Positions 10,661-60,586 of a stretch of 64,000 bases of DNA are shown here, one piece after another (within the stretch, counting starts at the first letter, position 1; each line of letters opens with the position of its first letter). The DNA comes from Bugula neritina (lineage: Eukaryota; Animalia; Bryozoa), in assembly GCA_964035545.1 (NCBI GenBank), contig OZ037766.1, positions 15,180,722-15,244,721 on the forward strand. Reading direction: 5' to 3'. A program made the translations under genes and the position numbers. The notes under the pieces are model-generated. The model saw only the letters and a program-made list of their open reading frames with translations, was not told where the DNA came from and did not search any database.

Positions 10661-12702
10661 AATCAGAGGCTTCTTGCTGCAACAAATTTAGTAATTTTTT
10701 CCAAAGCAGCAACAAATCTTTTGAAAATCGTCTCATTCGCCTTGTGCAGGGTAATTAAGCTGTTTGATCAATACCCTTATATACATACACACGCACACAT
10801 GCACACACGAACACATGTACACACACGCACATATATAAGCTCATACATATATATGGTCTTTGCAGTGAAATTTTCCTGCTTAAAATTGTCTTAAAATGAG
10901 TATACATGCATGTCTTTCATTGAAATAAAGGCTTTTTCTAGCTCGTGATTAACAAATTATGAAGCGTCTGGAACATAAATAATAAATATCTGTATGCAAT
11001 TATAAGCAACGGTTCCTTTATTTTGGATTTCTCTAATGGTGAAAGGCGAAAATTTTGATTTCATTTCATTAGCTATATACAGTCTACCATACAATTGTTT
11101 ATAGTTGCTGGTGTGAGTTTTAACATTTGGCATAATGATTTTTTCACCATCCCTTGGGTAGGCTGTTTTTGTTTCCTGCAATACCAGCAAACAACAGCAC
11201 ACTTGCATTCATTCTATGTCCATTTGTTATCTTTGGAACATATCTGGTTTTCGATTTCAGTGGTTTTGCATTAAATCAGCTTTTTGCATGTATGAGATTA
11301 ACCTGCCTTTACAACAGAGAAATCGTTTGGTCCAATTCCACCATATTGCAATGGAGTATGTGCAGGATGAGCTTCCGTTTTCTTTAACCGATTCTTCCTC
11401 TTTATCTTTTTTTTCATAATCAACAAACATTTAGTAAGCTAGCACCATTATTTAAACATACTTAATGTAGTATTATGCTGTAATATATTATAATACTCAG
11501 GATGTAAAAGGTCTCTGCAAATCATAGTTGAGCTATCAACATGTTAATATTATTGAATTTGCAGGAAATGTGCCTGTATAATCTTTTCTTTGAACTTTGC
11601 CTTGACTACACAGAGCTTGCTTCTTAAACCAGAAAACCTCTTTGAAAAAATCTCCAAGTGTGACACAATTATAAGGACGTACTGTAAAAAATAATGATTT
11701 ATATTCGAAATATTTTTCTGGTGAGTTATTGCAAAATGCTAAACTAAAAGTAAAATCATTATGAATAATATATCACTATATTATGTTGCGCATGCAAAGA
11801 TCTGATGGATGTTTCAAATAGTTATGACATAATTTAATCTTACTATTGGTAATAATGAGGAACTATAACTTACTAATACATCTTCACTGCCAGGAGAGTG
11901 AATACCAGCAGAAAACTTAGCTACAGCTTAGTAAAAGCAGCAACGTACATGTATTTATATAACCCATAGTTTTCTTATAAAGTATAAAAAGTTTACGTGT
12001 TGAAGCAACAATAAATAATTGTAGCTTCATGTATACTCAGTAAACACGCAGTTAATGTATCATTGTGTCTTTCATTATGTTATGCTTAATTGTTGACCTT
12101 TTTTACAAAATTTTTGCTCACTTATTGTAATAATATGTATATAAATAAGTATTTAAAATAAAATATGCAAGTAGTTGAGGCACACTAATTTCTTTTCAAA
12201 CAGAGTGTCAGTGCAGTGTTCTTCACTAGAATTGGCTGGTGACAAGGAATTACAGAATTCCTGCTAAATTTAAACAATGGGATAAGATAGCAACACCAAA
12301 GACAAAAGTTAGAGAAAGATCTATAAACCACTAAGTGTTTCATTTAACTAGACACATAATCTTGAAAAGTTGCTGCATCTACATCGTATGGCTTATATGA
12401 ACAAGCTTGCACGGTTGGTGCTGATTAATTTATTTCTATCAAAATTTTTAGACTGAAGCATATAATGTAAAATTATAAAACAATATTTTTGGTACCCAAA
12501 TTATTAGTTTTGATTAACAAATTGAAAATAGATAAGCGCCTAAGGTGCAAAACGTAGTGCAAAATAAATCAAATCTAAATGGTAATATTGCATATAAGAA
12601 CAGTCGATATTGATGGCACATTTAGTTCTATATCAATAGAGTATAACTCTAGTAGCATCTAGCTGCATCTTCCCTTGTAGTCCTTTGCAGCAGCAGTTAA
12701 TT

Positions 12703-15700
12703 CTACTCTACTTTGGTCGTATATCTGGTCCAGATGTAACTCCATGTCCTGGAGACATGCTTGACTTTGATTTCTTCTGGAATAGTAGGGAGATTATTGA
12801 GCAGTTCATATACTCTTGTCTCATCCTCATCATTAGTCCTGTATGTTATGAACTCAACCAACGCATCATGCAACCTGTATGAGAATACATATCCATCAAT
12901 AGTTACTGTGGGTAGAACATTCTGTGGTGTAGAACATTCTGTGGTGTAGAACATGAGGACTTCAAATTTACTAATCCTATAATATTTAAGAATAAAAACC
13001 TACATAAGTATGACTATAGAGCACAACATAAGAATATAGCAAATACAGCAGCAGTTAAGTTGTGGGATCAAGTAGTAGTATTATGCTGTTGATAGAGATG
13101 ACTCTCCCCCCCCAGAAAGAGCTTTGACAAGCAGTAAACATTCATCGGTTTGACCACCACTTTTGTAGCGTCACTGAACTTATTAACATTGCATTGCAAA
13201 GGATAAGTTTAGTCAAACTATACATTATTTCTCCGACTATAGAAGAGTGACACACATAAATATCAACAAGATTAAAAACAGAAGCATTAGCTAACTACAC
13301 ACCCTTGGTCTGGATTCACACTTTCTTGTTGAACTGCTGCTTTATTTAGCCTGAGGATGATAAATCTAAACAACTCCTGAAGAAGTTGCTTAGTTCTAGG
13401 GCTATTAAACTGACACTGCAGCTTGAGCTCCTCATGTTGCGTAGCATTCAAAATTTCTCGACATTCGGCAGAAATATCGTCGAACGGCTCCTGAAAGACG
13501 ACACAGAATTGAGTGATGCATCTAACATGTTGCAGAACAAATCAGAACTCAAAAAAATAATTTATGTAATACGCAGAAGAAGGGCTCAAGACACCACATA
13601 GTTAAACAATTCTTTAAACATAACATAAAATTATGAATGAAACCAGTTAGCCTAGGGCCACACGGTGCATATTTTCGCATGCGAAAATTGAAATAACAAG
13701 TAGCAAAGGTGTCCACTGTAGCGTCAGTGATGCGTGATAAATAAAGCATTCATTTTTAAATCGCACTCGCTTTCAATAACACGCAATTTACTGGAATGTA
13801 GCACTAAAATAAAGAAATTGGGCTCGCTGAATAACTACCAGCCAATTAAGTGACGAAGACAGAGACGATTCGCACTTGCGTTGAAAATGCAGAGCGACAA
13901 GTGCGAATGTTTTCTCAACGCGCACAGTGGACACCTTTGCTACTTGTGATTTCAATTTTCGAATGCGAAAATACGCGCCGTGTGGCCCTAGGCTTACTGG
14001 GACACAAAGCCATAAATATATCTATCACCTACAAGTTACATGGATATATTTCACTGTATGTGAAGATGTAACACTGAACAGTACCTGGTGTTTTCTCATA
14101 AGCAGGTCAGTCTGTGTGAACTTAACAACTAGCCACACGTGTACAACATGCTTTAGCTTAATATCATTGGTCAAATAACTTGGCACTCTGCCAAATGTAG
14201 CTTCCATGTACTCAAGTAAAGAGTTATCTCCCTCTATGTGCTTCATTACAGAGAGAAAATTGATGACAATCCTCAACTCTTTCAGATTGTGAGTTAATGT
14301 CTGCACATTCATTGACAGCATCTTTATGATAGAAGCTTGCAGATCAGCTGACATGAATTCCTAAAATACACATCAAATTATACAGTAAAGTCTAGTGAAT
14401 AGTTCTCAATTAGCTATGATAATAATAGAAATATATCCACTCTGAAAAATACCACAAAAACACAATAAAGTAGTTGCATAAGTTTCCCTGCCTGACTGTC
14501 ACCTAATATAACTGAGTGACATCTGTCAAATACCAACCTGACTGTCACCTAACACAACTGAGTGAAAAGTGTCAAATACCAACCCGACTGTCACCTAATA
14601 CAACTGAGTGACATGTGTCAAATACCAACCTGACTGTCATTGATTGCCTGCATCTGGTTGTGGAGATTAAAATCTTCTTGATAGACATAAAATGGCAGCT
14701 GATCTCTGCTGAACTCAATCCTTGGTTTGTTACTGATATATCTGTGCATTACTTCTCTCTCTATAGCTGGCCAGTTGTATGTAACAGAAGTTGTCTCCCT
14801 TAACTCATATTCACTGTGAGACTGTATGAGGTTGAGAAGCTCATCTCCAGTAGACAAACTGATGATGTTGGTTGGTGTGACAGCAGAAAGAGGAATCTTT
14901 AATCTAGAATGAAAAATAATTTAAATGATCAACATATACATCCCAGTTAATAATGTTTTCACTGATGCAAACTAACGAATGAATGATGACTTTTATATGT
15001 GCATAAGAAATAAGATTTTCACAAATTTATATTATCAGACACTAAAACAATTTTAATAATAAGATTATACCTCATAGAGTCATCGAATGCGAGTCGGCCA
15101 TTATGTGTATCAGTGAGCACAGCAACCAACAGAACTGGCATGGATTCTGTGTAGCGCTGTTGGTCAATCAGGAAGTTTGAAAGAACGGATCCCATGTGCA
15201 GTTCTTTTAGTCGTTTCCCACCAACTTCTGATAAAAAATTGAAATATATTTATAATTATTAATGCAATGTAAGTTGATACTCAAAAATAAAACGCAACTA
15301 TAAACTTAATAAGCTCAGTATTATATGCTATAAACTCTACTCAAAAATTTTTTTTATAACGTAGGAAATGTCTGTAGCTGTGTTATCAGTTATCACATAA
15401 ACCTTTTAGTCTTAGCAACATGATTAATAAATGCAGATCACACAGCACACACACACAAAGTAATAAGTATATATTAATACATATAAAGAATTTCAAAAGT
15501 ATGTAGATGTATGTTATATAACAACATTAGGGGTAAGTTTTCCAGTTTTAATTTCCATCATGATTGTATCACATGTTCACTTTGAATATTAAAAGGTAGT
15601 ATAATTTCATAAAACAAGCTACTAACCACCCAGCAGCTGGTAGACGGAGTTCCAAGCTTCGATAAAGTTAGACACCAATTGTTTCAAGTTTGAAATTTCC

Positions 15701-17641
15701 TTTTCGTACTGCTGACAGAAATCTTTAACACGGAGCTTGGAGGCATCCACACGGCTGAACTTGCTGTGAAATCTATCACCGAGTGTCTTGATCAGAGAGA
15801 GCACGTCTGGTAAATACTTGACAGCCATCAGAGCATCACAATGGTCTGTAATGTCTTTCAGTCTTGGACAGTTCTGGATAACACAACATACACTCAAAAG
15901 TAGGTAGAGTTGGTAGGAATGCAACAACAATATTATACCAGTGACAGTGTCACACAATACTTGATGGGCTATTCTCCCTTTAGAGTAGGGAATGCTTACC
16001 TTCACTGTAGATCCAAGCATATTCTGAACAGCTGCCAAGGTTAGAGGTCGTCGGTAACCCCAGAGCCCAGCTGATGCCAGGATGTTGTCATTATTAATTG
16101 GTTTATCAGAAACAGAAAGAAGTCTCTTGATGTCTACTGAGTCAGCTGACTTCAGCTTTCTGTTCATATTCTGTAGCTGTTGTGTCTGTATAGACAAGGA
16201 AATATACAGCTGATAGCCACTGTAATGTTACTCTGAGCATATAGTCTCAACATCTGATTTACTAGACATGTTCTGTGAGAGTAACATTTATCTGAACATT
16301 AAAACTACAAATGCATGTACAAGAACTATACAATTTTTAAATAGCTTTCAGGCCAAAATAATTTTAGTACTAAATGAACTGTTTCTAAGTATTCTAAAAT
16401 TTAATATAGTATTCTACTAAAAAAGTTATCTTTTAATTTAACCGAAAGGAAAAAGAAGCAAAAAAATAATTAAAAAGATAAACCATTATAGATGTTTAGT
16501 CAAACTAATAAAATAACTGATCATTAAATGCTAAGGACATGCCCAGACAGCTACTGCCTCTTACACTTTGGCACTAAACACATTCCACCATTGATACTGC
16601 AGTGGCTGTTAACACTGCCTTTTATAAACAACTGAATCACTTTCTGCTTAGTATATGCACACATCAGGTAAAAGGTGCTCAGCAGTGCCAGGTAAAGGAA
16701 ATTACCTTTTGACTGAAAGTAGGTTTAATATACTTCATGTCAAACTGTTGCTCCCACTGTCTCCTCTTAGCCATTGAATCCAACACAATATTGTTACCAT
16801 TACGGGCAGCTGCAAAACAACACATGCAATATACAGGCCCACATTCATAATTGTTTCTAGTGGAATATGCTGCATTTATTTAGCTATGATTTTTTTCTAC
16901 AAGTGCTATCAACTAATAACTCTGTCATAAAAAAGCAAGATAGCAATTATTTAACATTTGACGAATTAAAGCCACGATATTAAAAATATAGTATATGTAA
17001 AAAACTAAAGCAGTTCCAACCATCAAGAGATTAGCAATGATGCTATTTTTTGTAGTACACAAAAAACATGCTATTGTATATTAATGTGTTAAAGCCGAAT
17101 GATAAAAGCATTTACTTTCAAAACTCAAAATTAAATATTTACTAGTCTGAGTGCGAGTGATGGTATACATATAAACTTTGATTTTAATAAATCAAAGACC
17201 AGATTCGTACACACCATGTTTTATCCTGTTGATGACATCATGAAGTAGTAGAATACAATCATCTGTACTCTCAGCACAACACTGAGCAATCTGTTGTAGG
17301 TCTAACTGTATGTGAGCATCTATGAATGGTCGAACATCCTCCTCTCTTGCTAAGTTTGGGCGGATCATTTGATGTACCTGAGTTATACAATAATAACTGT
17401 ATGTTGAACAGACTAGCTGTGTACATACTTAATAGTAAGTGTAAACTGTAGGTTAATAATAGAATATATTAAACAGATATGACTTACATGCTGGATGTTG
17501 AACAGACTAGCTGTGTACATACTCAGATGAGTCAAACACCTCAACACAGCACAGGAAAGAGAATTCAAGTCTCTCTCTGGAGCAGTTTGACTCCTTCTAT
17601 CTGCTGTACCCAGTATATGACCAGGTTGAGTCTTTCCTGAA
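12703..17641 (-). CDS. RNF213: RNF213 exons: end of E3 core and C-terminal domain
   Basis: Exons 17488-17641, 17215-17377, 16706-16809, 16000-16185, 15627-15873, 15071-15227, 14630-14903, 14085-14360, 13303-13490 and 12703-12874. Peptides GKTQPGHILG, KYLPDVL, YNWPAIE, KLKHVVHVW, EPFDDISAEC, IPEEIKVKH. Confidence 0.9.
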
Positions 17642-20600
17642 CTGTAATACAATTTATAACATATTCTGTAACATAAACCGTGTTTCTAATATACATCATA
17701 TAGTACCAACCTAAAGTAGTATGCATATATACACTCAACCATCTGTAGACTTATACACAGACACATATAAAACATGAAAAAAATAAATTGAGTTGCAAAA
17801 CTTCAAATATGAATAAAAAATTACAAAAAGAAAATTATTAAATCAGGATGGCCAAATAAAACCACTGAGAGTTACTATAAAGATATATACATCTGTAGAC
17901 TTATACACAGGCGAGACATGAAAAAAATAAATTGAGGAATATAAGGGTTGCAAAACTTCAAATGTGAAGAAATTAGAAAATGAAGACAATTTTTAAATCT
18001 AGATGATCAAATAAAACCACTGAGAGTTAATATAAAGATAAATTGTTGTTAGTAAAAGAATCACTGCTCATCGGAAACCAAACAACTTCATCAGCTGCAG
18101 TACCTATCAGTTGCTGTGACTGTTTGATTCCCAGCAGCTCCAGTATGTTGTTCACCTCCAATTTGTGCACCACATGTGGGACACTTGGCTAACACCCACG
18201 GACGCCCACACTAAAACATTAACACATAGTCAGTTGTAACTAATAAAAGCTAACCTGTTTGCAGCTGTAATGTTGACATTCCCAGCAGCAGCTTGATTGT
18301 AGGCACCAGTGCTGCCAATATAGGCTCCACACCCATTAACTGTGCACTGGGCTCGTTCAACAGGTCTTCCACACTGGAACAGGTTTTATTATTAAAATAA
18401 ATAATGACATACCAGGATACTAGTTATAGTCAAGGGGTGCGAAGTAACACTAGAAAGGGTATTACTCAAAATTACAAGCATCACATGATATGAAACATTT
18501 TGTGTTTGATATAGGCCTACAATATAAAACCTAATCTAACTTTAACTATTTATGATATATGTAAGTATATTATAAAAGTTGCATGGTAAGTTGTTGTGGT
18601 ACAAAAATAAGGATAGGAATTTTTAAACTTACATCTCCAATAAAATAAGGATGTCCATTTGGGCATTCTAAAACACATGAAGACATTATTATAGGTAAAC
18701 TCATGCTTTGACTGAGAAACGTCCATACATTAGAGCATCGCAAGATTATCACTTTAGTAAATGTTAGCAGAGAAATAATCTCGACTGGAACATTTGGATA
18801 TACTACTATTTTATTATAAATGCATGAGTTGTGGGTTCACAGTCAAACAGCAATCAAACCCTCAAGCAAATGTCTATTAGTAAGCTGAACACACCTTATG
18901 GCAGTAAATAAATTTACCTAGCCAACACCTAATGTTGCATTTTATGTCTATAAACAAAAATTATGATTATGCATCCCCAGTGAGTTACAATCACTTACTG
19001 TAAGTAGTGGGGGTTCCACCAGAAGCCTGTTGAAGAGCCTGCTTTATCACATCCTGCATTAGCTCCAACTGATTGTCAGCCATTGTTGGAAAGAAATGTG
19101 TCTAAAATTATTGGATGCAATACTACAAGCTATGGAAAAATAGTGTCACAAGAATACAGTGCACAAAAACACAGTTAGATCACATGACATTTTATCATTC
19201 AATTTGAATACAAACACAGTTGCTAGAAACTTACTATTAGTTACAGTATAATTTGACTAGACATACCGCAGCCTGAAGTGGTTGGCTGATGATCTCAGAG
19301 AGAGGATACAGGTCAGCCATGACACCTCCACTACCCAGACAACTGTACAAGTTTAGAACTAACATAGACAAGTTAATTCCTTTAGACTGTTTCACGTCCA
19401 TCTCTCTGGGTAGTCGATTGTCTTGCAGTAACATCTCCAGCAAAGTCTACAAAAAAGGAAATATTAGCATGTTAACCATATCAGTAAAAAACAAAAACAC
19501 ACAGTCAACAAACAATTCCAGCACTGCCAGCCATTTCACAACTACAACACAACTCACCGTCTTATATGTGCCTTTCAGTGTTTTACTCAACTCCTGAGTT
19601 ATACCGTTTCTAGTGTTGATGGACACTGGAACTCGTTGCACCAATGTTCTGGTGATTCTTGTGAACAGAACTTGTAACATTATCATGTCATTTTGACACG
19701 TCTGAAAGAAATAGACAAAATGATTTCATAAAAAACTGTACATTAAACAATAACTAGAAAGAGCTAACAATGGCAGCTAAATAAATACTGAAATATGTCA
19801 GTGAATGAATGCTCGCTGCACCAGCCACCAAGTTGTTTAAATTAAAAATTATACTTGGCTCAGAAGGCTAGGCTTGGTTTAGAGAAAAACCTAGAATATA
19901 AATTAGATTAGTACTTGTCTGAAATTATTCAAGGCATTGACAAATCCATTTCCAGGATATGTCTCAGCAATAACTTTGTCCAGAGAAGAGATAGATTCTC
20001 TGTAATGTTTCTGGTTGGTTACAGAGAGAGCATCTGGCACATCAAATGACTCCAAGTCATGTTTGACATCATCAGGAAGAAGAAAGTTCAGTGAAGTGTT
20101 GACCAGATCTTTAATAAAACTCTCACCACGACTTGCCATTAGTTGTCTAGCAATCAAGTATCTAGAAAAATAGCAGTAACACTTTATATCAACTGAAACT
20201 AGAGAAATATTCTATCTAAAGTGTTGAAAGAAACATTTTTTAGGAAATACCAGGTAATGTAGGACAATAAAAATGAAAAAATGTCAAATATGTGGTTCTG
20301 TTTTCTAGAACACAATTAGCAGTAGCAGAACGTCCAACACTCGGTTTCCAGATTAAAAAATATAATGAGTCATTTTACTTAATTTAGTACATCTAGAGAT
20401 CTCTCTAGTTTTAGCTATTGTTCACAATTTAGTTGCTAATTTATATGGGTTTTCACCCTAAACTAAAAAATACTAACAAATGCAACTAATTAATCAAGGT
20501 TCTTTTTAATTTTGCTTGATTTCCCGTGTTTTCCCTGATTATTTAATGAATGGACCCTTTTCAGAGGTCTCCTTCACAATTAGGAGTTGTGTCCTCTCCA

Positions 20601-22770
20601 AGTGAATAAGTTGAACCTTTGTATAATGAGCAAACTCATTAAAAATTCAAAGTTTGGCTGCTACTTAAAACTTTAATTATGCTATATTAGCAGTTTAAAA
20701 CTTTTTTCATAAAAATATTACATGAAGAACTTTAAAGAAAATAAACTTTAGCGCATTTTTGTGGATTCGGTTACCAAGCAATGCTGAAGTGGCACTTCAG
20801 CATTGATCAGCAACCAAAACCACAAAATTGCGCTAAAGTTTATTCTGTTCAACATTTTTCATTTTGAGAGGACGCAACTCCTAATTGTAAGGGGGTCATT
20901 GGGATCTCTAAAAAAGGCCTATTGAGACTTTCGAACCGTGATGAAAAACCATAACGACTCGCATATATCTATTTAGCTCATATAAAAACGACGCTGTCCT
21001 TAATGTTGCAGGACCTTTCACAGCCTTTGCTTGCTATACACACAGTTAAAACCTGCACATAGAAGTATACCACATAGTAAATTTTTACAAATTATGAGCA
21101 AATTTTAAGTTTTGGTCGTAACTTGCTGATGTGTACTATATAAAATAAAATGACTTGAATATGCATCTTGGTGTGAAACCGTTTATAGCTGAACCATCAG
21201 GTGTTAATTGAAACAAGAATGTAATACAGAACTAGTGAGCATCATTACCCTGGCTGAGTGTTCCCTGATGATACAGAACTGTGAAGAAATTTCTTTAGAG
21301 ATGTTTCCAGTTTTTTTCCAAAAGGTATTGAATTATTTGCCAACAAGCATTCGAGAGACTGGCTGATACAGCACTGTGCATCTGCTAGATCTGATAAAAT
21401 TCCCACAGTAGGTTTTGGGAAAGAGTCTGTGACTAACTCCACATAAGCTCCCAGAACATCTGACAACATATCTAGATCTTTGGCAAACTGGTGGCCAAAA
21501 CTATCCTGTAAATTCAATTAATCAAGGGTAAAAGGCTACCACATAGAAAACAATGATATCTGTCCAGCTTGGTATTCCCAAAATTTTGACTGGCGACTAC
21601 TTTGTGAAAAAGTAAAAGCAGAATTACATTATTACACTATTACACTATTACATAAAAGCTACAAAATACTTCCATACAACAGACCTTGCGACAATCCATG
21701 AGCAAGACCATGGTTTGGAGCTGGTGTTGTTGGTTGGTAGAGACAGCAAGTACTTTGTCAAGGTAAGTGTTCACATAATGCTGTTGTCTGCATGAGAGTA
21801 AGAGTTTGAGTAGAAATGATCTGAGAACAGGGGTTGGATCCACAACTTCTTGACTGTTGAATAAACTGAACTGTCTGGTTGTCTCTCCACCCCTGGCAGT
21901 CACACAGTCCAGCAGCCATCTTATGATCTCATCATCAGGATCTCTTTCCTTTTCATTGAACATGATGTCAGACACAAATTTCATGAAGAATTTGTTCATT
22001 CTCTTTCTCAAGTCTTTGAATGAAGTCAGTTGCTGTTCACTATAATCAAACTAACAACTTCTAGTAATTTAATATTAATACTAACAAGCAAAATAATATA
22101 ATAAAAATCACAAACAGGAAGTCAAGTGGGTTGAACATATTTTGTAAAAACATGCACTATAATGTTACCAAGTTTAACAAAATATTGACAATAATAGAAG
22201 TTATTTCAACACTACTAAAAAGTGAATAGAATTTCATACATACTCTATGTTATCCTCTGCTGGATTATAGTTATATGGTTTTGGTATTTCTTTGCCACAG
22301 TTATCCACAGAGCATATTTGCACTTCTTTTACACAGCCATCACATATAAAATGATTGCAAGGCAATCTGATGGGTGAATCTAAAGCTTTATCACAAACAG
22401 GGCAGGTTTTAGGGCAGTTGCTAAAACACAAAACATTCTAAGCTTATTGGCCGTAATAAATTAATTTGCATGAAGCAAATCCCAACAAATGCTTGAGTAG
22501 TGACAGACAAACTCTCTCAGCATATGTAATATTTTGCAAGAGAACATAATATACCTAAGTATAAAATGCAGAAGCATTTTTGAACTTACGAATATAAATT
22601 CTGGATATTGTCTACAACAGCTGCCCTGAGAAAGTCAATCACTTGTTGAAATGTCTCACAACTCTGGAAATCTCTACCAGTAACCATCTAATAGTAACAA
22701 ATTACATATGAAAGATAAATAAGTAAATAAATAAATAAACAAATATATATATACATATATACATATATAT

Positions 22771-22837
<67 letters not shown>

Positions 22838-25800
22838 GGAATGCAAGTTGTATATTATCATAAAAGGAAGCTGGCAGATTTAAGCATGAAGCAGTACAAA
22901 GTTTTATATTATTCATAAACTTGTCACTGTAAATACATAATTATATACTTATTAAAATTATTGTTTTAGCAGTTTAGTTTAATAAGCCAGACTTTTTTAA
23001 CGAAACCCTCGTCTATAAATTCCAACTGACTTCGTCCCAAGAGAATAAACAGCTAGAATTTAGTATAAAGACTAAAGGGGAATAGTTATGACGTACAAAG
23101 AATCAAATTAATCTGCCTACCCTTGTGAAGAAGGCAAGTTTGTGCATTGGTCTCTTCCCAGTCTTTTTGACAACAGGACTTGGGATGATGATATGCTCCA
23201 CATAAAGTTTTTTTACGTTGAGACGAGACCATATTCTCCTGCAAATAGTAGGCACACATAGGATAGAAGACATGCATATTTGACAAACAACTTCATTACT
23301 GGTATACAAGGCGATTTTTTGGCTGTTGATAACTTAACAAAATTTTGTTATCAGTATATATAAATATCAGTATATATGAATATAACTGCCATGTTTTTGA
23401 GCCTCTCTCTGTTTATTACAGCTATTAGCATATATTCTATCCATGTGACAAACGAAATACTAACTTAATAAAGTTAAAAGCAAACATCAATAGAAAACAG
23501 AATTCGCTTGCAAGTTTTACAAGATGAGGTCTTGTTTAGAAAAGAACATCCTCTCTGATGTATATTATAGTGTAATAAGAATAAGTATATTTTTGATGCA
23601 AAACTGTTGCTCTAAAGTCTAAAAAAATTTGACTGGTAAATATTAAAAATAAAGTTTGATTGTATGCATTGAAGTAAATAGACTTCAAGAGCATTAGGAG
23701 TAAAAAAACTAAAAGATGATTTAAAATAAAAAAGGTGAGAGAAAGGAGTGTTGCTATGAAGAAAACAACTGGAGACACGCATTGTAAAATGTGTGAAGTC
23801 AGCCATCATCAAGCAAACACAAGTGAAGATGAAGCCAATAAATGATCTTTAACAGTGGCAGAGCTTCACTATTACTAAGCTAAATGTTGAGCCAGGTGTA
23901 AAAAAGTGCAAAATAGAAGCATATTACAAATAAATATACATTTTTTGACAATAATACAACAAAATTAGCAAATCAAGTATTGAAATCTGAAATTTTACAA
24001 CAGAAGAAAATTATTGAGTAAAATTTAACAGAGACATGGTAAGTTTTGCTTGAAGAGGTGGCGTAAAAAATGAGTTTTTGCAGGTCAAAGAAAAACATCA
24101 AATTAACCGATCATTCCATTGGTCAGTTAAAGATGGCTCAGACAACTTTCGTTTCTATGGCAACTGAAAAATGACAAAGGGCATGCATGTTATGCAGCTG
24201 AGACCCTCTCACCTGCACTCAGTTATATATTCCTCATTCTCATCTTCTTTGGAGTGGAGAATTTGCAAAGTTATCATCTTACATTGCTCTACTTTTTTAA
24301 CCCAAGATTCAGGGTTCAACATCAGTTCATTAGCTCTTACGTCCCACAAGGAGGTGAGTAAACAGTTCAGAGCAAGAAAGTCACATGGCTACAAGAATTA
24401 TATCAACATTTTTAACAATATAAATCAATAGCTCTTTCCAATAGGTCATCAAAGCATCAAAATGTATAAAAACCACAACATTATTTGTTAAAACATACCA
24501 CAAGCTCCTTTCCTTCTTTGATGGTGGATTCTACTTGTTTTTTCACTAAAGAAATGACATCACTATCTTCTTCAAGCAAAGCAAAGACTGCAGAGAGATT
24601 CTCAAACATAGCCTTCTGTTGTCTGTAAGCCACGTTGACGTGCACCAGACTGATGTCACCAAATACACTTCTTTGAATGCTGGTCATCAAGTAGAGGCCA
24701 ACAATCTACATCATAGGAATTACATTTGAAGACTACAACTTTTACATTTGTAAGAGATTATTACCAAATTGAATAATCCCGCAATTAGTAACTTTTATTT
24801 TTTAAAAACAATCTTGATACATTTTCCAACACCAGTAGAGATTCAAAAGCAGTCATACTAATTAGGATTGTCTGTTATTATCATAATGGAAAAAGCTGCA
24901 TATGCATCATAGTCAACTGAAATTGTGTTATAAAAGCAACTAAATGTTTTGAAATCAAACTGTAAACCATAGTCGCATATTTTAAATTAAGAGAAATAAA
25001 TTCAGTACTCATGATTAAATAGAGAGCTCAAAACTGTAAATATTTCTATGAAATAAAGATTGTAATATACCTTATGTTCGTGTGAGTTGATACAAGGGTG
25101 GACCATGTAGATGAAGTCAATAAGGTAACAGTCCAACAGTTCAGTGACTCGCTTTCTGTTCTCATCATCAAAGAAGACTTTTCCAATAGGAGACATTTTG
25201 AACTGCTCAATTGAAGACTCGACTCCAGCCCCTGAAACAGTATATGGCTTTAATATAAACATTCCCAAATATCTTAACACTAACAAATTTCTACAACATT
25301 TAGTTAAAAATCATCCAGAATAAAATACTGAAACCAATCTCAATGCTAGAACTATAAAGCTTGCATAGTAACATAGTAAAAGAATGACATTAAGGTAACT
25401 TGTTTATTATAAAACATCAAAATTCTACTGAAGTGACTCACCAAAGTCCAGGTTGACATTAGCACCCATCAGGCTTTCAATAGTTTCCTTCACAATCCAT
25501 GAGAAAGGAAGTCGAGTTGAAAAGTTGTGAGAGCCATAACCAATCTCCTGGATCCTGTACTGCTGAGGTAGTTTCTATGATAGACAAACCATTACACTTT
25601 GATCTCTAAACATATCTCTAAATTTATAATGTTTTTATTTGCATGCATTAGGAATCATTCCAACAAGTATAAGTAATGTAACAAATATTAAGGCAAAATG
25701 CAGGCATTAAACAACATACAGCTTGGTTGTTGTTGGCTTTGTTGTGCTTTGTAATATGACTGAACTTCAGTCCCAGCTTGTGAGCTTGTTCAAATATCTG

Positions 25801-28800
25801 TAGCCAGAGAGAACTGAGGTCTGATGGTCCACTGATAGTTACCAGGTTTTGTCTGACATCAATAAATGATATGACAGCAGCCATTGCAGGTGCAAGAGCT
25901 CTCTCCAAGGCATCTTCTAGAGAGTGTCTAAAATTAGACAATAGAATGCAGTAGCATTTTAAGAACACAGGAATTTTGACAAAGTTAAAGCAAAAATACT
26001 TTAATATGAATTTGTCCGAAATTGTATAAATGTTTATATGATTAATAAACAGTACACAAACATATCCCGATAATTAAATTTATAATAATACCATTATATA
26101 AGGCAGCTAATCTTATAACACCTGGTTATTATGTTATATGTTGTAATAAGAGTAGACAACATGCTCGCAAAAATTTCTCTCATCTTTGCAGTCATAAAAA
26201 CACTAAATTTGACCATAATAACATAATGGGAAAACGTTTTTTAAAGAACACACCACCATAACTTTCGATCATAGAAAACTGTGAAGTGGAACTTTAGCGA
26301 TAGATATTACACTAACAAACCATATAAATAGTAAAACTTAATACCACAAAAGCTCAAAATACATTGAAAGTATGCAATAATCGACTTACCACAAACGTAA
26401 ACGTGAAAAACAGAGAGATTCGCACCTACTTATGCATGCAATAACTAGAGTATCAACTGTTTTATATTCTATTACTAGCACTTTCCCATTACACATTTAA
26501 CTTGTAGACAGCTACATAGAAGTAGAAATAAGATTCATGATAGATATAATAAAACACTGCTAGACTACCTCATAGTTTCAGACTGCTTCATATTGCTAGC
26601 TTTAGCTGCGTCTGCTGTAACCCAGTGGGAGGGGCTAAACTCTTCTTGTTTCTTCAACAATTCATAGACGTGCTTCAAGAAGAGACCAGCAAAATCTGTA
26701 AACCACAAAAAGGAGACCTGATTTTATTGTCATTGCTACATGCTATGAACATAGCAACACCACAGCCTAGGAGCATGAAATATCCACATTTATTCATTAC
26801 CAATACCACTACACATTCAACAGAGTTAAACTTTAATTTGTCATACCTGATAGCTCAGTAAAATAGAAAATTATTCTAAAAAGATAAAAATTCAAGTGTA
26901 TTTCAATATTTGATAAAAAATATTTTGTCTTCCAATAACTTGCTTGCTGAGTAAAACCTACTACTTCTGTTCTACAATTTCAAATAATAAAAAAAATCGC
27001 AACTCAACTTCATGATTTGATGGTCTAAAAATACCAAGTACTAAAATTTACCAACCAATAAGAACAGTTTAAAATACTCATCTAACCAAACTGTTGCAAT
27101 TTCAGATTAGCATAGTAAAAAAGGTATAAATATACTGCCAAATTATTAAAAACCTATAATTAACCTTAACTCGCACCTAAGCTCTTGAATCTATGTTATA
27201 TACTGCGAGTGGAAATGTATTCTAATAGTAGAATGAGTGTCATGTTTCTTGCAATGCACAATTTACGACTAAACAGTATTAATTCTAACATAACTATATG
27301 GTTTAAAATAGATCGCTGAAAACCTACTCGCAGTATGTGACCCATTATGTTTCTTCACTCTTAAAAATACATTCATCAGTTCCCATTATTCAAATCAGTT
27401 ATTGGAACATAAAAATCGCTATAATAATTACATTCCTGCAAACATGTTTTAATTTAAAATCAAACAATAAATTCCCAAAATACAAACATTATACACTGAA
27501 CCTGTACTTTTATTACTAAGTACTTTTTAAACTAGAAATGTAAATACGATTCATTTCTATGAGTGACTAAGTAAGACACTAGCCTTTGTCTTTGGTGAGC
27601 AGTTTCTTCAACAGAGCCACTCTGTCATACTGACAGTCTGCTTTGATAGCAGACACTGCAGCTGGAAGACATTGTATAATAAACAACAACATGTCATCAT
27701 ATGATGCATCTTCACTATCAGTTGATACGGGTTCCTCCGGAGTAGCTCCAGTCTCCTCAGCAGCTACTGGTTCCTCTAGAGTATCACCCTCCTAGAAGAA
27801 ATGAGTAGTTGGTAATTTACCAAAAAATTAGTATGTCTTAAAGACTTATTTTGGCATTAATGAATAATTTATTACATGTACGTAGCAAAAGTATTCCAAA
27901 ATTAATCAGAACATAAATAATGTGAAGTAGAAAAGTTGTTTAGTGTTGACCAAATAATAGCAAAAATCACCTTTTCTATTCACAGCTACATGCTATCAAA
28001 AGTAAGTTGTCTTTAAAAACCCTGACATGAATACAAAATCCACATTTGATAACACAAATTTGAGAATGAAGCTACAGCATCACCAGCTTACATTAATAAT
28101 CATGAAGTCATTGTCGTCATCTTCGTTGTCATCATCATGAGCTGTGACATCAGAGGGAACAGGATGGAGTTGTCTCATCACTTTCTCAATGATACCACTG
28201 GGAGTCAACTTCAAACATTTGCTGAGTGATGGTAGTCTTATCTGTGGTGACTTAGGATCATCAATGTGAACACAACTCCATTTTCCTCCTAGCAAAATCA
28301 TATAAATAGATTTATTTTTCTTTTTTAATATTCAGCAGATTCACAACAAAATATAATCTTTAAAAAACATGAAAAGTATTGCATCCTATATATCATACAT
28401 TAGAATAAAGGAGTTGCAGCACTAACATATAGCGACCAAATAATTTATAAATAATATATGTGTACTATTGAAGCACACGACTCAGCACCATTCACCTGTG
28501 ACTAATATGAATCAGCACAATACCCACCTTGGTACCCTGTGAAGGACTCTCCTCTGGGTAGATTCAGAAGTAGAACTGTGTGTGTTTGAGTAGCTTCATT
28601 TTCACGTAATCCAACTGCAGCCTCACTTTCACGCTGAATGATGAATCTCACCGAGTCGAGTAGTTCTATATTTTCATTAGCAGATTCACACTGAATCAGT
28701 AGGATTTGTGGTTTCTTGTTAACTTTCTCATACTGAGACCTGTAAAACGCAGTCAGTTGACTTATTGTTACAATTGTTATAATATAACACCTGACAATTA

Positions 28801-31800
28801 AAGTACAGCAATGCGTTTAGCCGACACATTGAGTAAGTAAATCACCAGAAATACAGGGATAGTTAAATTTCAGCCACTTATATTGAATTAAACAACAACA
28901 TGCATGCCACAGATTTTAAAAATAGTTTGAAGTAAGTTTAAGCTAAAGTTACTGATTTAAAATTATTAACAATTGTTTTATTTGCTGACTCAAAACTTCT
29001 AACCTGACAGCCTCGGTAAATTGATCTTCTTTCACAAAGTCTTTGAGAAACATGTTTTGTATGTCCAACAGTAGACCAGACTGGCTGAGACTATGAGAGA
29101 GAGATGTGATGTCAGCAACATTCATCAGCTCAGCAAAAGATGTCACCTGGTTATGAAGATGACCAAAGTTGTGTTGGATATTTCATTTATTGCAGTGAAG
29201 TATTATATAAACAAAATTGATTTGTTCTAAATACGTTTCAACAGTATAAAAAAACAAATATATGTATTATAAACAGCAAGCAACCTGAAGAAATATGGAG
29301 GAGTCTCCAGCCATTGGGATCATATGCTGCAGATATTGTAGGAGAGTCTCGTGGTACTGCTCTTCCATGTAAGTATTCTGTATTTGTTTAGCCTCAGATG
29401 CCAGCTGTGTTTTGTTGAGACGTAAAACAGACTCCCCCGTAGCACATTGAAGCAGATGGTATTTGGCACATTCCAGAAGCTGCGTAAACAAGTAGAAAAT
29501 CGTAGTCGAATATTGAAATAAAAAAAGTTTAACACTACAAAAAATTAACAAATCTATATAAAAATGTAATTTATTTATACCTCTGAAGAATTAGATTCTC
29601 CATCAACCTCTTCTGCAGCTTTACGCACAGCCAATGCAGTCGTCTCTGTGCTGTACCCAATGAACGCCGTCTCTGTACTTGAATTCTCAAAGTATTGCCT
29701 ACAAAAGAATATAATACATAAAAATAAATGAAGAGTACAATAATTTGCAAGTCCAAATATATTATTATTACTAATTAAAGTGTAGGCTGTAAAAAGTTTT
29801 AGCTACAATAGACAAAATGATCAGATAATTATTATTGTAATTTAAAAAGTACGTTCACGTTATCAAGATCAAGTAAACAAAATCTAGTAAGAGACTGCCA
29901 GAAGTGTCAACTATCAAAACTGTAAAATTTAATGCAAACAAACGGATTTTAAGTTAAAAATGCCATCTAGTAGTTATTAGTTATTACAAGTCACTCTGAT
30001 TTTTAGTCGTTTAAAAAAGAAAAGAAGACAACATAAAAACAGAATTACCTGTTCTCCAAAGCTACAGAGTCTATCACCCATTCCTCCAGCCGGATTTCTT
30101 CACCACAATCTTCGACGGGGCACTTCCTCTCCATGAGTTCATTTTCAATTTTCTCTTTACAACATGAACCAATGAAGTGCCGTTGACAAGACAGCTTGTA
30201 AGGTCTGGTCAGCTCTGCACCACAACCTTCACATGATGATGGGCATACATTCCTGTGAATAACACACAAGAAGTAAAAATAATCATATTCTGAAAACACT
30301 TGCTAACTACCAACTATGGCTTTTTTCTGGGTTTTTACTATTGCAAAAATAGTTTTCTAACCTGTAAATCAATTGAGGTGCAACAAATTTCTGGGCCCAG
30401 TTCTCCAGCTCTCTCTTCACTTGCTTCTGCTCATCTGTGAGAAGGGAAGTAGCAGAGACATAGTGTTTCTCTAGACGGTTAATGAGAGGAATTGGAAACT
30501 GGGAGTGTACTTTGTTCTTGTCGGCTATCACTACCAATCTGTCGATATATGTACAAACAATAATATATTACACTTCTAACGTAGTGCCGAAACCATCAAG
30601 GTTCTACAGTTAGTAGCGGTATGTTAAAAATAAAAACGTCAATAAAAATCCAGACACAAGGTTAAATCATTAAATGAATATTTTATTAAACTTGAACAAT
30701 AAATCAAGAAGAGCTTTGTGTAAAAATATCTGCTCAATCAGTAAATTGTCTTTCATGTAACTTATAATATACAGCAGGTGAATAACTGAAAACAGTAAAT
30801 CTTTCATACATGCAACAAAACTATGCTATAATAAAAATTTTCCGCTATCACTAGCTACCTGAATTTGTCATCAACAAAAGTCTTGACTCTGTGAGTACCA
30901 AGCCCAAGATCCACAAACTTCTTGTCCCCCCAAGTAGAGAAGTACTGGTTGAGGGCGTCATATAGACTCTCGTACAGATCATCAAGATTGAGTAGGATCA
31001 CAGGTTTACCCATGTCCATGCATGTCTTTATTCTGTAGATGTTGTGACACACCTACACAGATGTTATATTCATGAGATAATTAGTGAAACAAACCATCAT
31101 TAGAATGTTTACTATTGTTTGCATACAAAAATGACCATGTACAGTGTCATTATCTCCCCTCACCTGTGTATATGAAACATCATCTCTGAACTTGCTACCA
31201 AATACTACTTCTGGATGCATGTCTTTAGAGTGAAACTCGGTGAGAATAATACTCAGGACACTCAAGTTCTCAGTCAATATCAGCAGATATCGACTTTCCA
31301 TTCTACAATCACCTATATATGTTTAAACTACTGCATATTTATCATGTTGAAAAAGTATTTGTACTTTTAAAGTATATGTTAGTTAGCATAGACTGTTGAT
31401 GATGGCATTTGACAATTAACTTAGGCCTCAGGCTATCAGCTAAATACTTAGTACTAATACTCTGTAGCGATTCAATACACTTTGAAAAGATGAAATAAGA
31501 ATGTCACTGATGTGAGAAAATGCACTCATGTACACAACAGAGAAAATCTCACACGCATAAATAAAATAAAATATAGAGAAGAAAAAAAGGTAATATAAAC
31601 TGTATGAATAGCGATGGCAAGAACTGGCTCATTCTACCAATAGACAAACTACCTTTCATCAAGACTTAGCAGGACTCACATACTATACTAACTGACCCTT
31701 CAAGAGCTGTATCTTCTCCAGAAAGACTGGATTGAATTAGTCCAATTGAATCCACTGGAGGACGGCCATCTTCCTGTGGCTCCAGATCCTCCATATTGCA

Positions 31801-34800
31801 ATATTTCTCAAAGATCGTCATTGGATTAAATTTTTCAGGATCAAAACCACCAAAGTTTCTGCGTATACTATGCTCAAGCTGGTTTCTGTTTAAAGACTTG
31901 GTGTTGTCAGCAAAGTTCACCACCATCTTCATCAAACTAGATAACACGCAAACAATTTGGAGTATTGTATAATAAGTAATACAAACTGTCAAAATGTTAA
32001 TAGTTACCAAACTTAATACAGAACATTGTAACAAAACAGGTATGCAGCAAAAACTCTAATCACAGACAATAACACAAGACCATGTGTAACACTTTTTTTA
32101 AGAATTGGCAACAAACCTGTAAAAATCTCTCAACCCAAAGAATTCTGTGAGGTCTCTCTCCTCGGGCTTCTTTGCGTCACAAATTTTAAGATAACCATTA
32201 GCCAAGGGGACAATGAAACGACCTACATTAGTGTCTCCGCTTTGTGAACCTCTGCATATTTCCCTAGCAATATACAACTAGATTGAAAGAACAACGTAAT
32301 TTAAAAACAGAACATAATTCTTCATAAAGAAAAAATAAATACTTGGCAATCTGTTCCAACTCCAAAGGTTTAGGAGTTCCTCTCTGGACAAATATGCCAC
32401 GGTTCATCTTGGCTGGATCCAGTGCCCAATTAGAGATGCCAACAAAAGCACACTTCATGTATGGTTCTGGTGTAATACTACTGTCTTCACAACCATCTTC
32501 TAGCAGAGGGTGTAGAGTCTACCAAAGAGTATTCAGTAGTATAGAGTGTGATAAGTCTAAAGCTGAAAAACCAATTTAAAACATTTGCTGGTGCAAGTGT
32601 TGACTACTTTATGACTAGCTTATGAGTTATACCTTAAGAGGCATGTTTTCAGAATCTTCAGCCAATCCGACTTCATCAAGTACCACAACTGAGACAAATG
32701 CATCCAACTCTTGGTCCTTCTGAAAGTTAGCACAGTGATTGAACACACCGACAATTCCAGCTGGTGTAGCGTGTCTGCTGCATTGAAAGGCAGCCATATA
32801 TGCCTAAAAATAGATTATTATAGAACATAGAACACACATTGCGATGTCATGTATACCAGAAAGCAATTGGAATGAGCCATCAATAAAATAATCAAAACAT
32901 CTGAACAATTATTAAAAAAAAACAATATGCAATAATATTCTCCTATAAAAACCTGTTTCATTTCTCTAAAGATAGCACTCTCTGATCTTTTTCCTTTCAT
33001 TGCATCCACAACCATAGCTTTGGACAGAGATTTAGAGCTGCCAGGTTTTCCAACCAGGAAAAGAGGAATTCTATTCTCAATGCAGACAATCATCATGAAG
33101 ACATTTTCTTTCAGAGCTTTGTTCTTAGCAATGTTCTTGTGCACATCTGTGTTCACTACTTCGTTGATGAACATGTCTTGACATCTAAAAATAATTTTGG
33201 TAAATTAAATGGCTCAATACGTAAAAACAATATTGTTGAATGCTGTTTCATGAGATGCTTGAATATACATGTATAGTTAGAAAGAAATCAAACTTTATCG
33301 TTAATAAATGAAGATATTGATACAAAAATGGTACATTATAGCACGACTGTCACAAATTCTAGTACTCAATTTATTAAATGCTAGTAATAGATTAGTCATT
33401 ACTGTACAATATCACACAGTAGTGATTCTTCATAGTAGTTGCTTGCTGTAATGAGATATACATATGTGAGTCATTTTACTTAATTTATTATACACTATAT
33501 ATCTCTAAGTTTTAGCTATTTTTCAGTTAAGCCACTATGTAGGGGAGAGTAGGGATAGTTGAACCACATGCTCTAAATTTTCTCCTTTAAATCATGGCAC
33601 TATTTTACTTCCTTTACTTAAGAGCGTTTCAGGTGAGCTACCAGACATATAGAAATATATAAAATCAAAGCAGAAGTTGTCAGGCTAGCGAGTATTTTTC
33701 ACATCTTTTGCATAAAGAATGAACAAACTAAAAATTGTTTTTTAGAAAAAGTTGCATAACTTCTCAAGTTTTAAGAGCCTAATCAAATAAATTGAGGCAT
33801 GTATTGTCGACATAATTTCAAAGCTGGGCAATGACCTAAAGTTGAAGAGATATCTCATTCACAGCAGATATTGACAATAAATTGTATCGAGACAGAGTGG
33901 GGCTAGTTAAACCACCCAAGAAGTTGGGTGAGTTGAACCAAGTACAACTTGCCCCATTAATTATTTTCACTATGTAAATTATAATTGGGCACACCAGTTT
34001 TTGCATTTAAGTTTATATTTTTCATGATTAAACGTTTTCTGACACCAATACATAAATCCAAACAAACATTTAGTCCTAAACCAAATAAAAATGTAAGTCA
34101 ACAGTGTAATTAAACTATCTGCAAATGTTTTTAGAATGATTCAAAATTTCATGGTAAAAACAAATAGAGAGGAACAGATTAGGAAAACTTAATTGCAGCA
34201 ATGAAGGCAAGGCAGTAGCGGAAATCATCCGCCATTAAGTTGAGAGCATTTAAACAGCCCTCTAAAAAGTTGGTTATGCTCAACCATACCAAGTATTTTC
34301 TAATATCATATGAGAGGACCCTACTTCATATATGTTACTTGTTTATAGATAAATTACAAGAAATCAACATCTGAAAGGTTTCTTACAAGTTTGCTGCTAC
34401 TGCTTCGGTTTTAAAGCGTTTTCTGTATCGCCTATGTATAAGATTTTAAATAGTTACCATGACAGATTACAACCAGAGTTTCTGCCATTTGTTCATTCCA
34501 ATTTATTCTGATTTTTTTAATGATTTTTATTGTCAATCTTCAAGAAATTGTTTTTCAACTTGCAAAAAAGGTAAAACAATTTATATATGGGAAAAATGGT
34601 ACTGGTTCAACATTTCCACGGGGCGGTTCAACCTGCCCCCTACTGGGGCACGTGCCAAAAAACTTACAGTAAAAAAATTAACTCTATCTCAGTAAGTAAA
34701 ATGTTTATATATTTGATTTTAATGGACAAAGACAGCAACATATGACTGATTTTTATGGTGCTGGTCTTTGGATTGGCAAAAAATTTCTTCAAAACCTATG

Positions 34801-60542: not shown

Positions 60543-60586
60543 CTAAAAAAGAATTATCCAAAGACTATTTTATACGCCATTAATAA

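What the first reader, a model, noticed from the sequence alone, without database searches (positions are those of the whole stretch)
18104..18667. Mutually exclusive exon pair that switches the catalytic half of the RNF213 RZ finger
Seen in sequence: the exon encoding KCPNGHPYFIGD (18633-18667) is followed by two homologous exons, each with clean AG/GT sites and phase 0 to 2. Exon A (18255-18373) encodes CGRPVERAQCTVNGCGAYIGSTGAYNQAAAGN. Exon B (18104-18210) encodes CGRPWVLAKCPTCGAQIGGEQHTGAAGN. Including both or skipping both breaks the frame into the next exon (SGKTQPGHILG). The intron between them is only 44 nt, with a CTGAC branch-like motif ~24 nt from the donor; the other introns I read in this gene are ~75 nt or longer. 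That is the classic steric arrangement for mutually exclusive exons. Established: the human RNF213 RZ finger (CPNGH...ECGRP...CxxC...IGGIDH) carries the RING-independent E3 activity needed for bacterial LPS ubiquitylation, with a catalytic Cys at CGRP and the GGxxH His as proposed general base. Inference: both isoforms keep the Cys and zinc ligands, but A has CxxxxC spacing and no His. Splicing may therefore toggle between an active and an altered-specificity, ubiquitin-trapping or dominant-negative innate-immune E3. Both exons are stop-free despite strong divergence, which suggests selection on both.
Basis: partly seen in the sequence, partly recalled or inferred. Interest (0 to 1): 0.92.

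Follow-up and report, generated by a model that had tools for sequence, protein, structure and literature searches.

The report
Splicing swaps an immune ligase's catalyst
A bryozoan gene for the giant antimicrobial ubiquitin ligase RNF213 splices in one of two alternative exons, so its active site either has or lacks the helper histidine; oysters and a clam carry a matching histidine/tyrosine exon switch, which points to two kinds of enzyme from one gene.

Summary
Confirmed. The window is Bugula neritina chromosome 2. Its RNF213 gene carries two homologous phase 0-to-2 exons, 44 nt apart, encoding the RZ-finger half that starts at the catalytic Cys. RNA contigs from four studies show all four exclusive junctions (A in three, B in four) and no A+B or skip junction. 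A paralog-specific upstream exon ties both forms to this gene. Exon A has an ortholog in another species with saturated synonymous sites, so it is under selection.

The larger result: His-less RZ fingers are a natural class (usually Tyr). RefSeq isoforms of four oyster species swap the same segment (Tyr or His form), and the clam Mercenaria has the exons in tandem, Tyr first. Shared origin versus convergence is unresolved. I found no paper on it.

Most likely both forms load ubiquitin but discharge differently: His for hydroxyl acceptors such as lipid A, no His for amines or slower turnover. This is inferred from RNF213, ZNFX1 and HOIL-1 mutants, not tested. A dominant-negative role is less likely. 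The scan noted the same pair in a neighbouring paralog (s1-472042).

The parts
18999..19102 (-). constitutive exon before the RZ finger (helix region); about 25% different in the nearest paralog, so it tags this gene
   Evidence: RNA pieces 18999-19102; differences to copy 2; only other genomic match 86%
18633..18667 (-). constitutive exon with the first two RZ zinc ligands (CPNGH), ends in phase 0
   Evidence: joints
18255..18373 (-). alternative exon A: catalytic Cys, CxxxxC, two-residue loop insertion, Tyr beside the His position, no His
   Evidence: spliced in runs X3, X5, X6; ortholog in L047
18211..18254 (-). 44-nt intron between A and B with CTGAC branch-like motif; identical in copy 2
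18104..18210 (-). alternative exon B: catalytic Cys, CxxC, GGxxH histidine (canonical dyad)
   Evidence: spliced in runs X1, X3, X5, X6
17488..17641 (-). constitutive exon after the RZ finger (GHILG), starts in phase 2
   Evidence: homologous to human RNF213 just after the RZ (via alignment A3)
22237..22437 (-). reading frame holding the canonical RING domain exon
   Evidence: Pfam RING families E 9e-6, below cut-off
32932..33186 (-). AAA+ core exon with a Walker A motif
   Evidence: matches human and mouse RNF213 structures at E 1e-23
12700..60560 (-). approximate extent of the RNF213 gene seen in the window (5' end not mapped)
   Evidence: collinear tblastn matches to full-length RNF213 proteins from about 60500 to 13350; reading frames

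Best explanation
A tandem exon duplication gave this RNF213 gene two versions of the catalytic half of its RZ finger, and each mRNA takes exactly one (shown). The 44-nt intron probably blocks joining A to B, and any double or skipped product is out of frame and decays (frame shown, mechanism inferred). Both proteins keep the zinc site and the Cys that accepts ubiquitin from the E2 (sequence shown, activity inferred). Form B keeps the His general base and should transfer ubiquitin to weak hydroxyl acceptors such as lipid A as well as to lysine. Form A has no His but a conserved Tyr in a slightly longer loop, and should load ubiquitin yet discharge mainly to amines or more slowly (inferred). The exon choice would then set acceptor chemistry and rate. 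Other lophotrochozoan genes reach the same two states by a matching exon pair (oysters, Mercenaria) or by single-exon paralogs.
For: Exclusive junctions in RNA from four studies, tied to this gene by the upstream exon. Ortholog of A with pS 0.80-0.92 and pN 0.21-0.29, grouped with A at 99/97 support. Same segment swapped between Tyr and His forms in RefSeq isoforms of Saccostrea echinata, Ostrea edulis, Magallana gigas and Crassostrea virginica; tandem Tyr-then-His exons in Mercenaria DNA. Tyr forms always have Ala or Val four residues after the Cys (20 of 20), His forms often Tyr (23 of 38), so they are two coherent site types. Mouse H4483A lowers autoubiquitination (PMC12075652); ZNFX1 H1881N abolishes RZ-route activity (10.1101/2025.09.05.674436); HOIL-1 H510A loses O-linked and gains Lys-linked transfer (PMC11962058).
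Against: No biochemistry on any His-less RZ finger. The HOIL-1 precedent is a different fold. In A the Tyr is one residue off the His column or in register only with two single insertions, so its equivalence to the bivalve Tyr is not certain. The covariation counts are not phylogenetically independent. Contigs show presence, not levels or absence. A tandem pair was not found in other bryozoan-like loci.
Confidence: 0.5

Rival explanations
1. Both forms are catalytically similar (Tyr or another residue stands in for His). The exon swap diversifies the exposed RZ loops to change partner or substrate recognition, or to avoid a microbial antagonist.
For: The exons differ over their whole length, not only at the His. 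His and Tyr codons differ by one transition, and the label changes at least 3 times, 6 on the best tree. The family is expanded to nine copies. Shigella IpaH1.4 targets human RNF213 (PMC12440826, title and abstract).
Against: The His matters experimentally in RNF213 and ZNFX1. The oyster Tyr exon is nearly unchanged across four species, which fits a fixed function better than an arms race.
Confidence: 0.25
2. Form A is an off-state: it loads ubiquitin but cannot discharge, and damps or poisons form B in RNF213 coats.
For: Removing the His lowers or abolishes activity in human and mouse RZ fingers. RNF213 coats grow cooperatively (PMC11549300), so mixed coats are plausible.
Against: His-less fingers are the only version in several genes (L021 in this genome, Pinctada L055), and the replacement is a specific Tyr with a covarying neighbour rather than random decay.
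Confidence: 0.17
3. Exon A is a decaying duplicate that is spliced by leak and has no role.
For: Between this gene and copy 2, A has three whole-codon amino-acid changes, one silent change and a changed last base at the donor, while B is identical. The chromosome 4 copy has a ruined A. Run X1 shows B only.
Against: Cross-species purifying selection. A lies in the main unbroken contig of run X5 and is present in three studies. The changes in copy 2 are in the tail, outside the zinc and catalytic core. In the chromosome 4 copy B is damaged too.
Confidence: 0.05
4. The A and B transcripts come from different paralogs or alleles, and no single gene alternates.
For: Copy 2 is nearly identical around the cassette; in run X5 the B contig carries copy 2's upstream exon. 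The RNA is from other colonies than the assembly.
Against: The window-type upstream exon is joined to A in one X5 contig and to B in X1 (two joints of the same depth, 647.3), and X3 and X6 show both arms leaving one shared window-type contig. That exon is unique in the assembly.
Confidence: 0.03

Closest known systems
RNF213 (mysterin) RZ finger, human C4505/H4509/C4525/C4528 zinc site with C4516/H4537 dyad (PMC11549300, PMC12075652)
   Same: AAA+ core, RING, RZ finger and following exon are homologous; form B has the full CHCC site and Cys/His dyad.
   Different: Form A lacks the His, has CxxxxC and a longer loop; the catalytic half is on alternative exons. Papers describe the His as highly conserved, and I found none describing His-less forms or this splicing.
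Bivalve rnf213-alpha-like RefSeq isoforms (for example XP_065928459.1 and XP_065928460.1; XP_056014151.1 and XP_056014152.1)
   Same: The same segment, from the catalytic Cys to just before the GHILG exon, is swapped between a Tyr and a His version; same phases, and the same Tyr-first order in Mercenaria.
   Different: Bivalve exons are 95-98 nt with CxxC or CxC and Tyr exactly in register; the clam exons are 724 nt apart, so no steric block. These are automatic annotations with no functional study found.
Mutually exclusive exons from tandem duplication, sterically enforced type (alpha-tropomyosin exons 2/3; own knowledge, not looked up here)
   Same: Homologous neighbours, same phase, donor too close to the next branch point.
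   Different: Here the swapped segment holds an enzyme's nucleophile and general base.
HOIL-1 His510 (RBR ligase; PMC11962058)
   Same: Transthiolating E3 whose His sets O-linked versus Lys-linked transfer; the model for what loss of His may do.
   Different: Unrelated RING2 fold; engineered mutant, not a natural isoform.

Membership tests
RNF213 | dynein-like AAA+ core with Walker A motifs | tested here: met
   exon 32932-33186 matches RNF213 structures, E 1e-23; second P-loop exon near 39200
RNF213 | RING domain in the E3 module | tested here: met
   22237-22437 hits RING families at E 9e-6, below curated cut-off, at the collinear position
RNF213 | RZ finger with CHCC zinc ligands and nucleophile Cys | tested here: met
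   ligands present with either exon; zinc binding itself not tested
RNF213 | Cys/His catalytic dyad | tested here: met
   met for form B only
Canonical RZ finger (form A) | general-base His after the IGG motif | tested here: not met
   no His in exon A in any register; form A is an RZ variant, not a canonical RZ active site
RNF213 | C-terminal E2-docking domain | tested here: inconclusive
   collinear 25-34% matches to the C-terminal part of oyster RNF213; E2 contacts not examined
RNF213 | N-terminal CBM20 domain | not tested
   5' end of the gene not mapped
RNF213 | transthiolating E3 activity, LPS ubiquitylation | not testable with these tools
   needs biochemistry
Mutually exclusive exons | adjacent homologous exons with the same phases | tested here: met
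Mutually exclusive exons | each exon spliced alone between the same flanking exons of one gene | tested here: met

Mutually exclusive exons | never both, never neither | tested here: inconclusive
   no such joints in four runs, but contigs drop rare forms
Sterically enforced mutually exclusive exons | donor-to-branch distance too short for the spliceosome | tested here: inconclusive
   44-nt intron against 79-331 nt for seven others; branch point not mapped, genome-wide minimum intron not measured

The most novel reading that the evidence does not exclude
Lophotrochozoan RNF213 uses an ancient or repeatedly evolved splice switch at the general base of its RZ active site, so that one gene yields an enzyme that ubiquitylates microbial lipids or glycans and another that ubiquitylates proteins, with the choice regulated by tissue, stage or microbial exposure.
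Probability: 0.3. Interest if true: 0.88.

Novelty: new variant of a known kind. Interest (0 to 1): 0.67.

Why it matters
How RNF213 chooses between lipid A, other non-protein acceptors and lysine is open, and the RZ histidine is the main suspect. Natural isoform pairs that differ only in this 33-39 residue segment, kept in two phyla, give a ready-made experiment. They also show that the 'conserved' His is replaced by Tyr in a large natural class. If regulated, this is a splice-level control of E3 chemistry in animals without adaptive immunity, including farmed oysters and a bryozoan that hosts a bacterial symbiont (own knowledge).

Tried and rejected
Assembly artefact for copy 2: rejected, its introns and several exons differ by 5-25%. 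Copy 2 as a pseudogene: no stop found in its true exons. Paralog mix-up as the source of the two forms: rejected with the upstream exon tag. Tandem pairs in other bryozoan-like metagenome contigs: none in L047, L048, L050, L052, L057-L069; Lottia, Mytilus and Pinctada genes each show one exon. Tree test of one origin for bryozoan A and bivalve Tyr exons: undecided, p-AU 0.44 on 32 columns (two long rows left out). AlphaFold model of the oyster Tyr form: pLDDT 64, Foldseek gave no significant PDB match, and no coordinates were available to measure Cys-Tyr distance. Single exons A and B are too short to find RNF213 in the PDB. The third protein search returned only its query. Intronic docking/selector complementarity: nothing over 9 nt. 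Oyster genomic DNA could not be fetched. Literature searches for RNF213 with mutually exclusive exons, bryozoans, oysters or RZ in bivalves showed nothing on this in titles and abstracts.

Full report
Source. The genome holds 216,009,554 bases and the window's contig is 33.58 Mb. Both figures match Bugula neritina assembly tzBugNeri2.1 and its chromosome 2 (PMC11480708). The minus strand carries a multi-exon RNF213 gene: an AAA+ exon matches human and mouse RNF213 structures at E 1e-23, a RING exon lies near 22400, and full-length homologs align collinearly from about 60500 to 13350. The genome has nine copies of that AAA+ exon, five of them within about 400 kb around the window.

Observation. 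Either exon alone keeps the frame; both together stop 7 codons into B, and neither stops 14 codons into the next exon. The A-B intron is 44 nt, while seven other introns measured are 79-331 nt. B scores 38.7 bits on Pfam ZnF_RZ-type and A 18.4; A aligns to an RZ profile with 93% probability.

RNA. I laid contigs of four runs from four studies on 17180-19180. The tool only guesses that they are RNA, but the pieces stop at the exon ends and join across GT-AG introns. The upstream exon joins A, and A joins the next exon, in X3, X5 and X6. The B junctions appear in all four. No A-to-B or skipping joint appears, though contigs cannot prove absence. A near-identical paralog (copy 2, about 95 kb away) also has A and B, so I checked which gene the RNA comes from. 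The exon at 18999-19102 differs by about a quarter in copy 2 and has no match above 86% elsewhere. One 516-nt contig of X5 runs from this window-type exon through A into the next two exons. In X1 the window-type exon and B are joined through the upstream exon by two joints of the same depth, which I read as one contig. In X3 and X6 both arms leave one shared window-type contig. So this gene makes both forms. The B contig of X5 carries copy 2's upstream exon. X1 shows only B; this hints at variable exon choice but contig depth cannot measure it.

Selection on A. A metagenome contig from another, unidentified species (L047, next exon 67% identical) has a 119-nt A-type exon with the same CxxxxC spacing, the same Tyr and the same first six donor bases. 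Synonymous sites are saturated (pS 0.80-0.92) while pN is 0.21-0.29, and the two exons group at 99/97. No B-type exon lies between it and the next exon, so there A may be the only version. Within B. neritina, copy 2 has changes in the tail of A but an identical B, a chromosome 4 copy has both exons damaged, and one paralog has a single His-less exon with Tyr.

The same switch in bivalves. Among 60 distinct RZ halves from mostly molluscan RNF213 proteins, 38 have His, 20 Tyr and 2 other residues at the general-base position. All Tyr forms have Ala or Val four residues after the catalytic Cys, while 23 His forms have Tyr there; B has Trp and A has Val, matching the pattern. These counts include close relatives. 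RefSeq isoforms of single genes swap exactly this segment in Saccostrea echinata (XP_061169263.1 Tyr, XP_061169264.1 His), Ostrea edulis (XP_056014152.1 and 53.1 Tyr, 51.1 and 54.1 His), Magallana gigas (XP_065928459.1 Tyr, 60.1 His) and Crassostrea virginica (XP_022293484.1 Tyr, 83.1 His). In Mercenaria DNA a 98-nt Tyr exon is followed 724 nt later by a 95-nt His exon, the same order as in the window. Lottia, Mytilus and Pinctada genes examined have one exon with the same phase boundaries.

One origin or two. The free tree separates bryozoan-type from molluscan exons with moderate support (SH-aLRT 86), and bryozoan exons of both kinds share a longer 3' tail, which leans towards separate duplications. 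Holding A with the bivalve Tyr exons is not rejected (p-AU 0.44). His and Tyr codons differ by one transition and the state changes several times on the tree. I put convergence at about 60%. In A the Tyr sits in a loop two residues longer, one position from the His column depending on alignment.

Mechanism. Shown: exclusive splicing, retention of the nucleophile and zinc ligands in both forms, absence of His in A, selection on A. From the literature: C4516 is the nucleophile and H4537 the proposed base (PMC11549300; 10.1101/2021.05.10.443411); mouse H4483A lowers autoubiquitination (PMC12075652); ZNFX1 H1881N abolishes the RZ route (10.1101/2025.09.05.674436); HOIL-1 H510A keeps E2 discharge, loses O-linked transfer and gains lysine transfer (PMC11962058). 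Inferred: form B can modify hydroxyl acceptors such as lipid A, and form A is biased to amines or is slower. I give this 0.5, loop diversification with equal chemistry 0.25, an off-state 0.17. For exclusion itself, steric hindrance is plausible here but cannot apply to the clam pair, and frame-dependent decay applies to both.

Novelty. RNF213 and duplicated mutually exclusive exons are both known, and the bivalve isoforms sit in RefSeq as automatic models. I found no paper that describes His-less RZ fingers or splicing of this active site, within a library that lacks most subscription journals.

Limits. Species names for metagenome contigs are unknown; 'bryozoan-like' is inferred from sequence similarity.

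Noticed in passing
window 30048-30302, - strand: A Cys-rich, RING-like exon right after the AAA+ core, in addition to the normal RING near 22400. Pfam gives only a weak zf-RAG1 hit. Earlier scan notes report the same in several paralogs.
   Followed up: partly
window 49235-52912, + strand: A LINE-type element (endonuclease and reverse transcriptase frames of 463 and 501 aa) inside an RNF213 intron, antisense to the gene.
   Followed up: partly
window 61140-63998, - strand: A second LINE-type element in several reading frames upstream of the mapped RNF213 exons.
   Followed up: no
G000:C2 15.05-15.45 Mb; loci L019-L024: Five RNF213 copies in about 400 kb with patchy identity: the exon after the RZ is almost identical between copies while the exon before it differs by a quarter, as expected from gene conversion.
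   Followed up: partly
L005 / L023 (G000:C4 about 18,816,500): A copy with a ruined A-like exon and a shortened B-like exon that has lost the His loop, still 44-45 nt apart; probably a pseudogene.
   Followed up: partly
L021 (G000:C2 about 15,267,400): A paralog whose only RZ exon lacks His and has Tyr after a two-residue insertion.
   Followed up: partly
L026 (G000:C2 about 26,115,900): An RNF213 copy with no recognisable RZ exons in the 1.5 kb before its post-RZ exon, whose own GHILG motif is altered; the RZ may be lost or lie further upstream.
   Followed up: no
proteins P0173 and P0227 (Mytilus), P0133 and P0164 (oysters): Closely similar RZ exons that differ in His versus Tyr, suggesting repeated single-base switching at this site.
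   Followed up: partly
proteins P0032, P0142: RNF213 proteins with Glu or Ser at the general-base position, a third state.
   Followed up: no
proteins P0057, P0160: About 300-aa unnamed proteins with a complete Tyr-type RZ finger on long ENA contigs (289 kb and 1.9 Mb); origin unknown.
   Followed up: no
window 17395-17430 and 17490-17525: The last 30 or so bases of the post-RZ exon are repeated inside the following 110-nt intron, also in paralogs.
   Followed up: no
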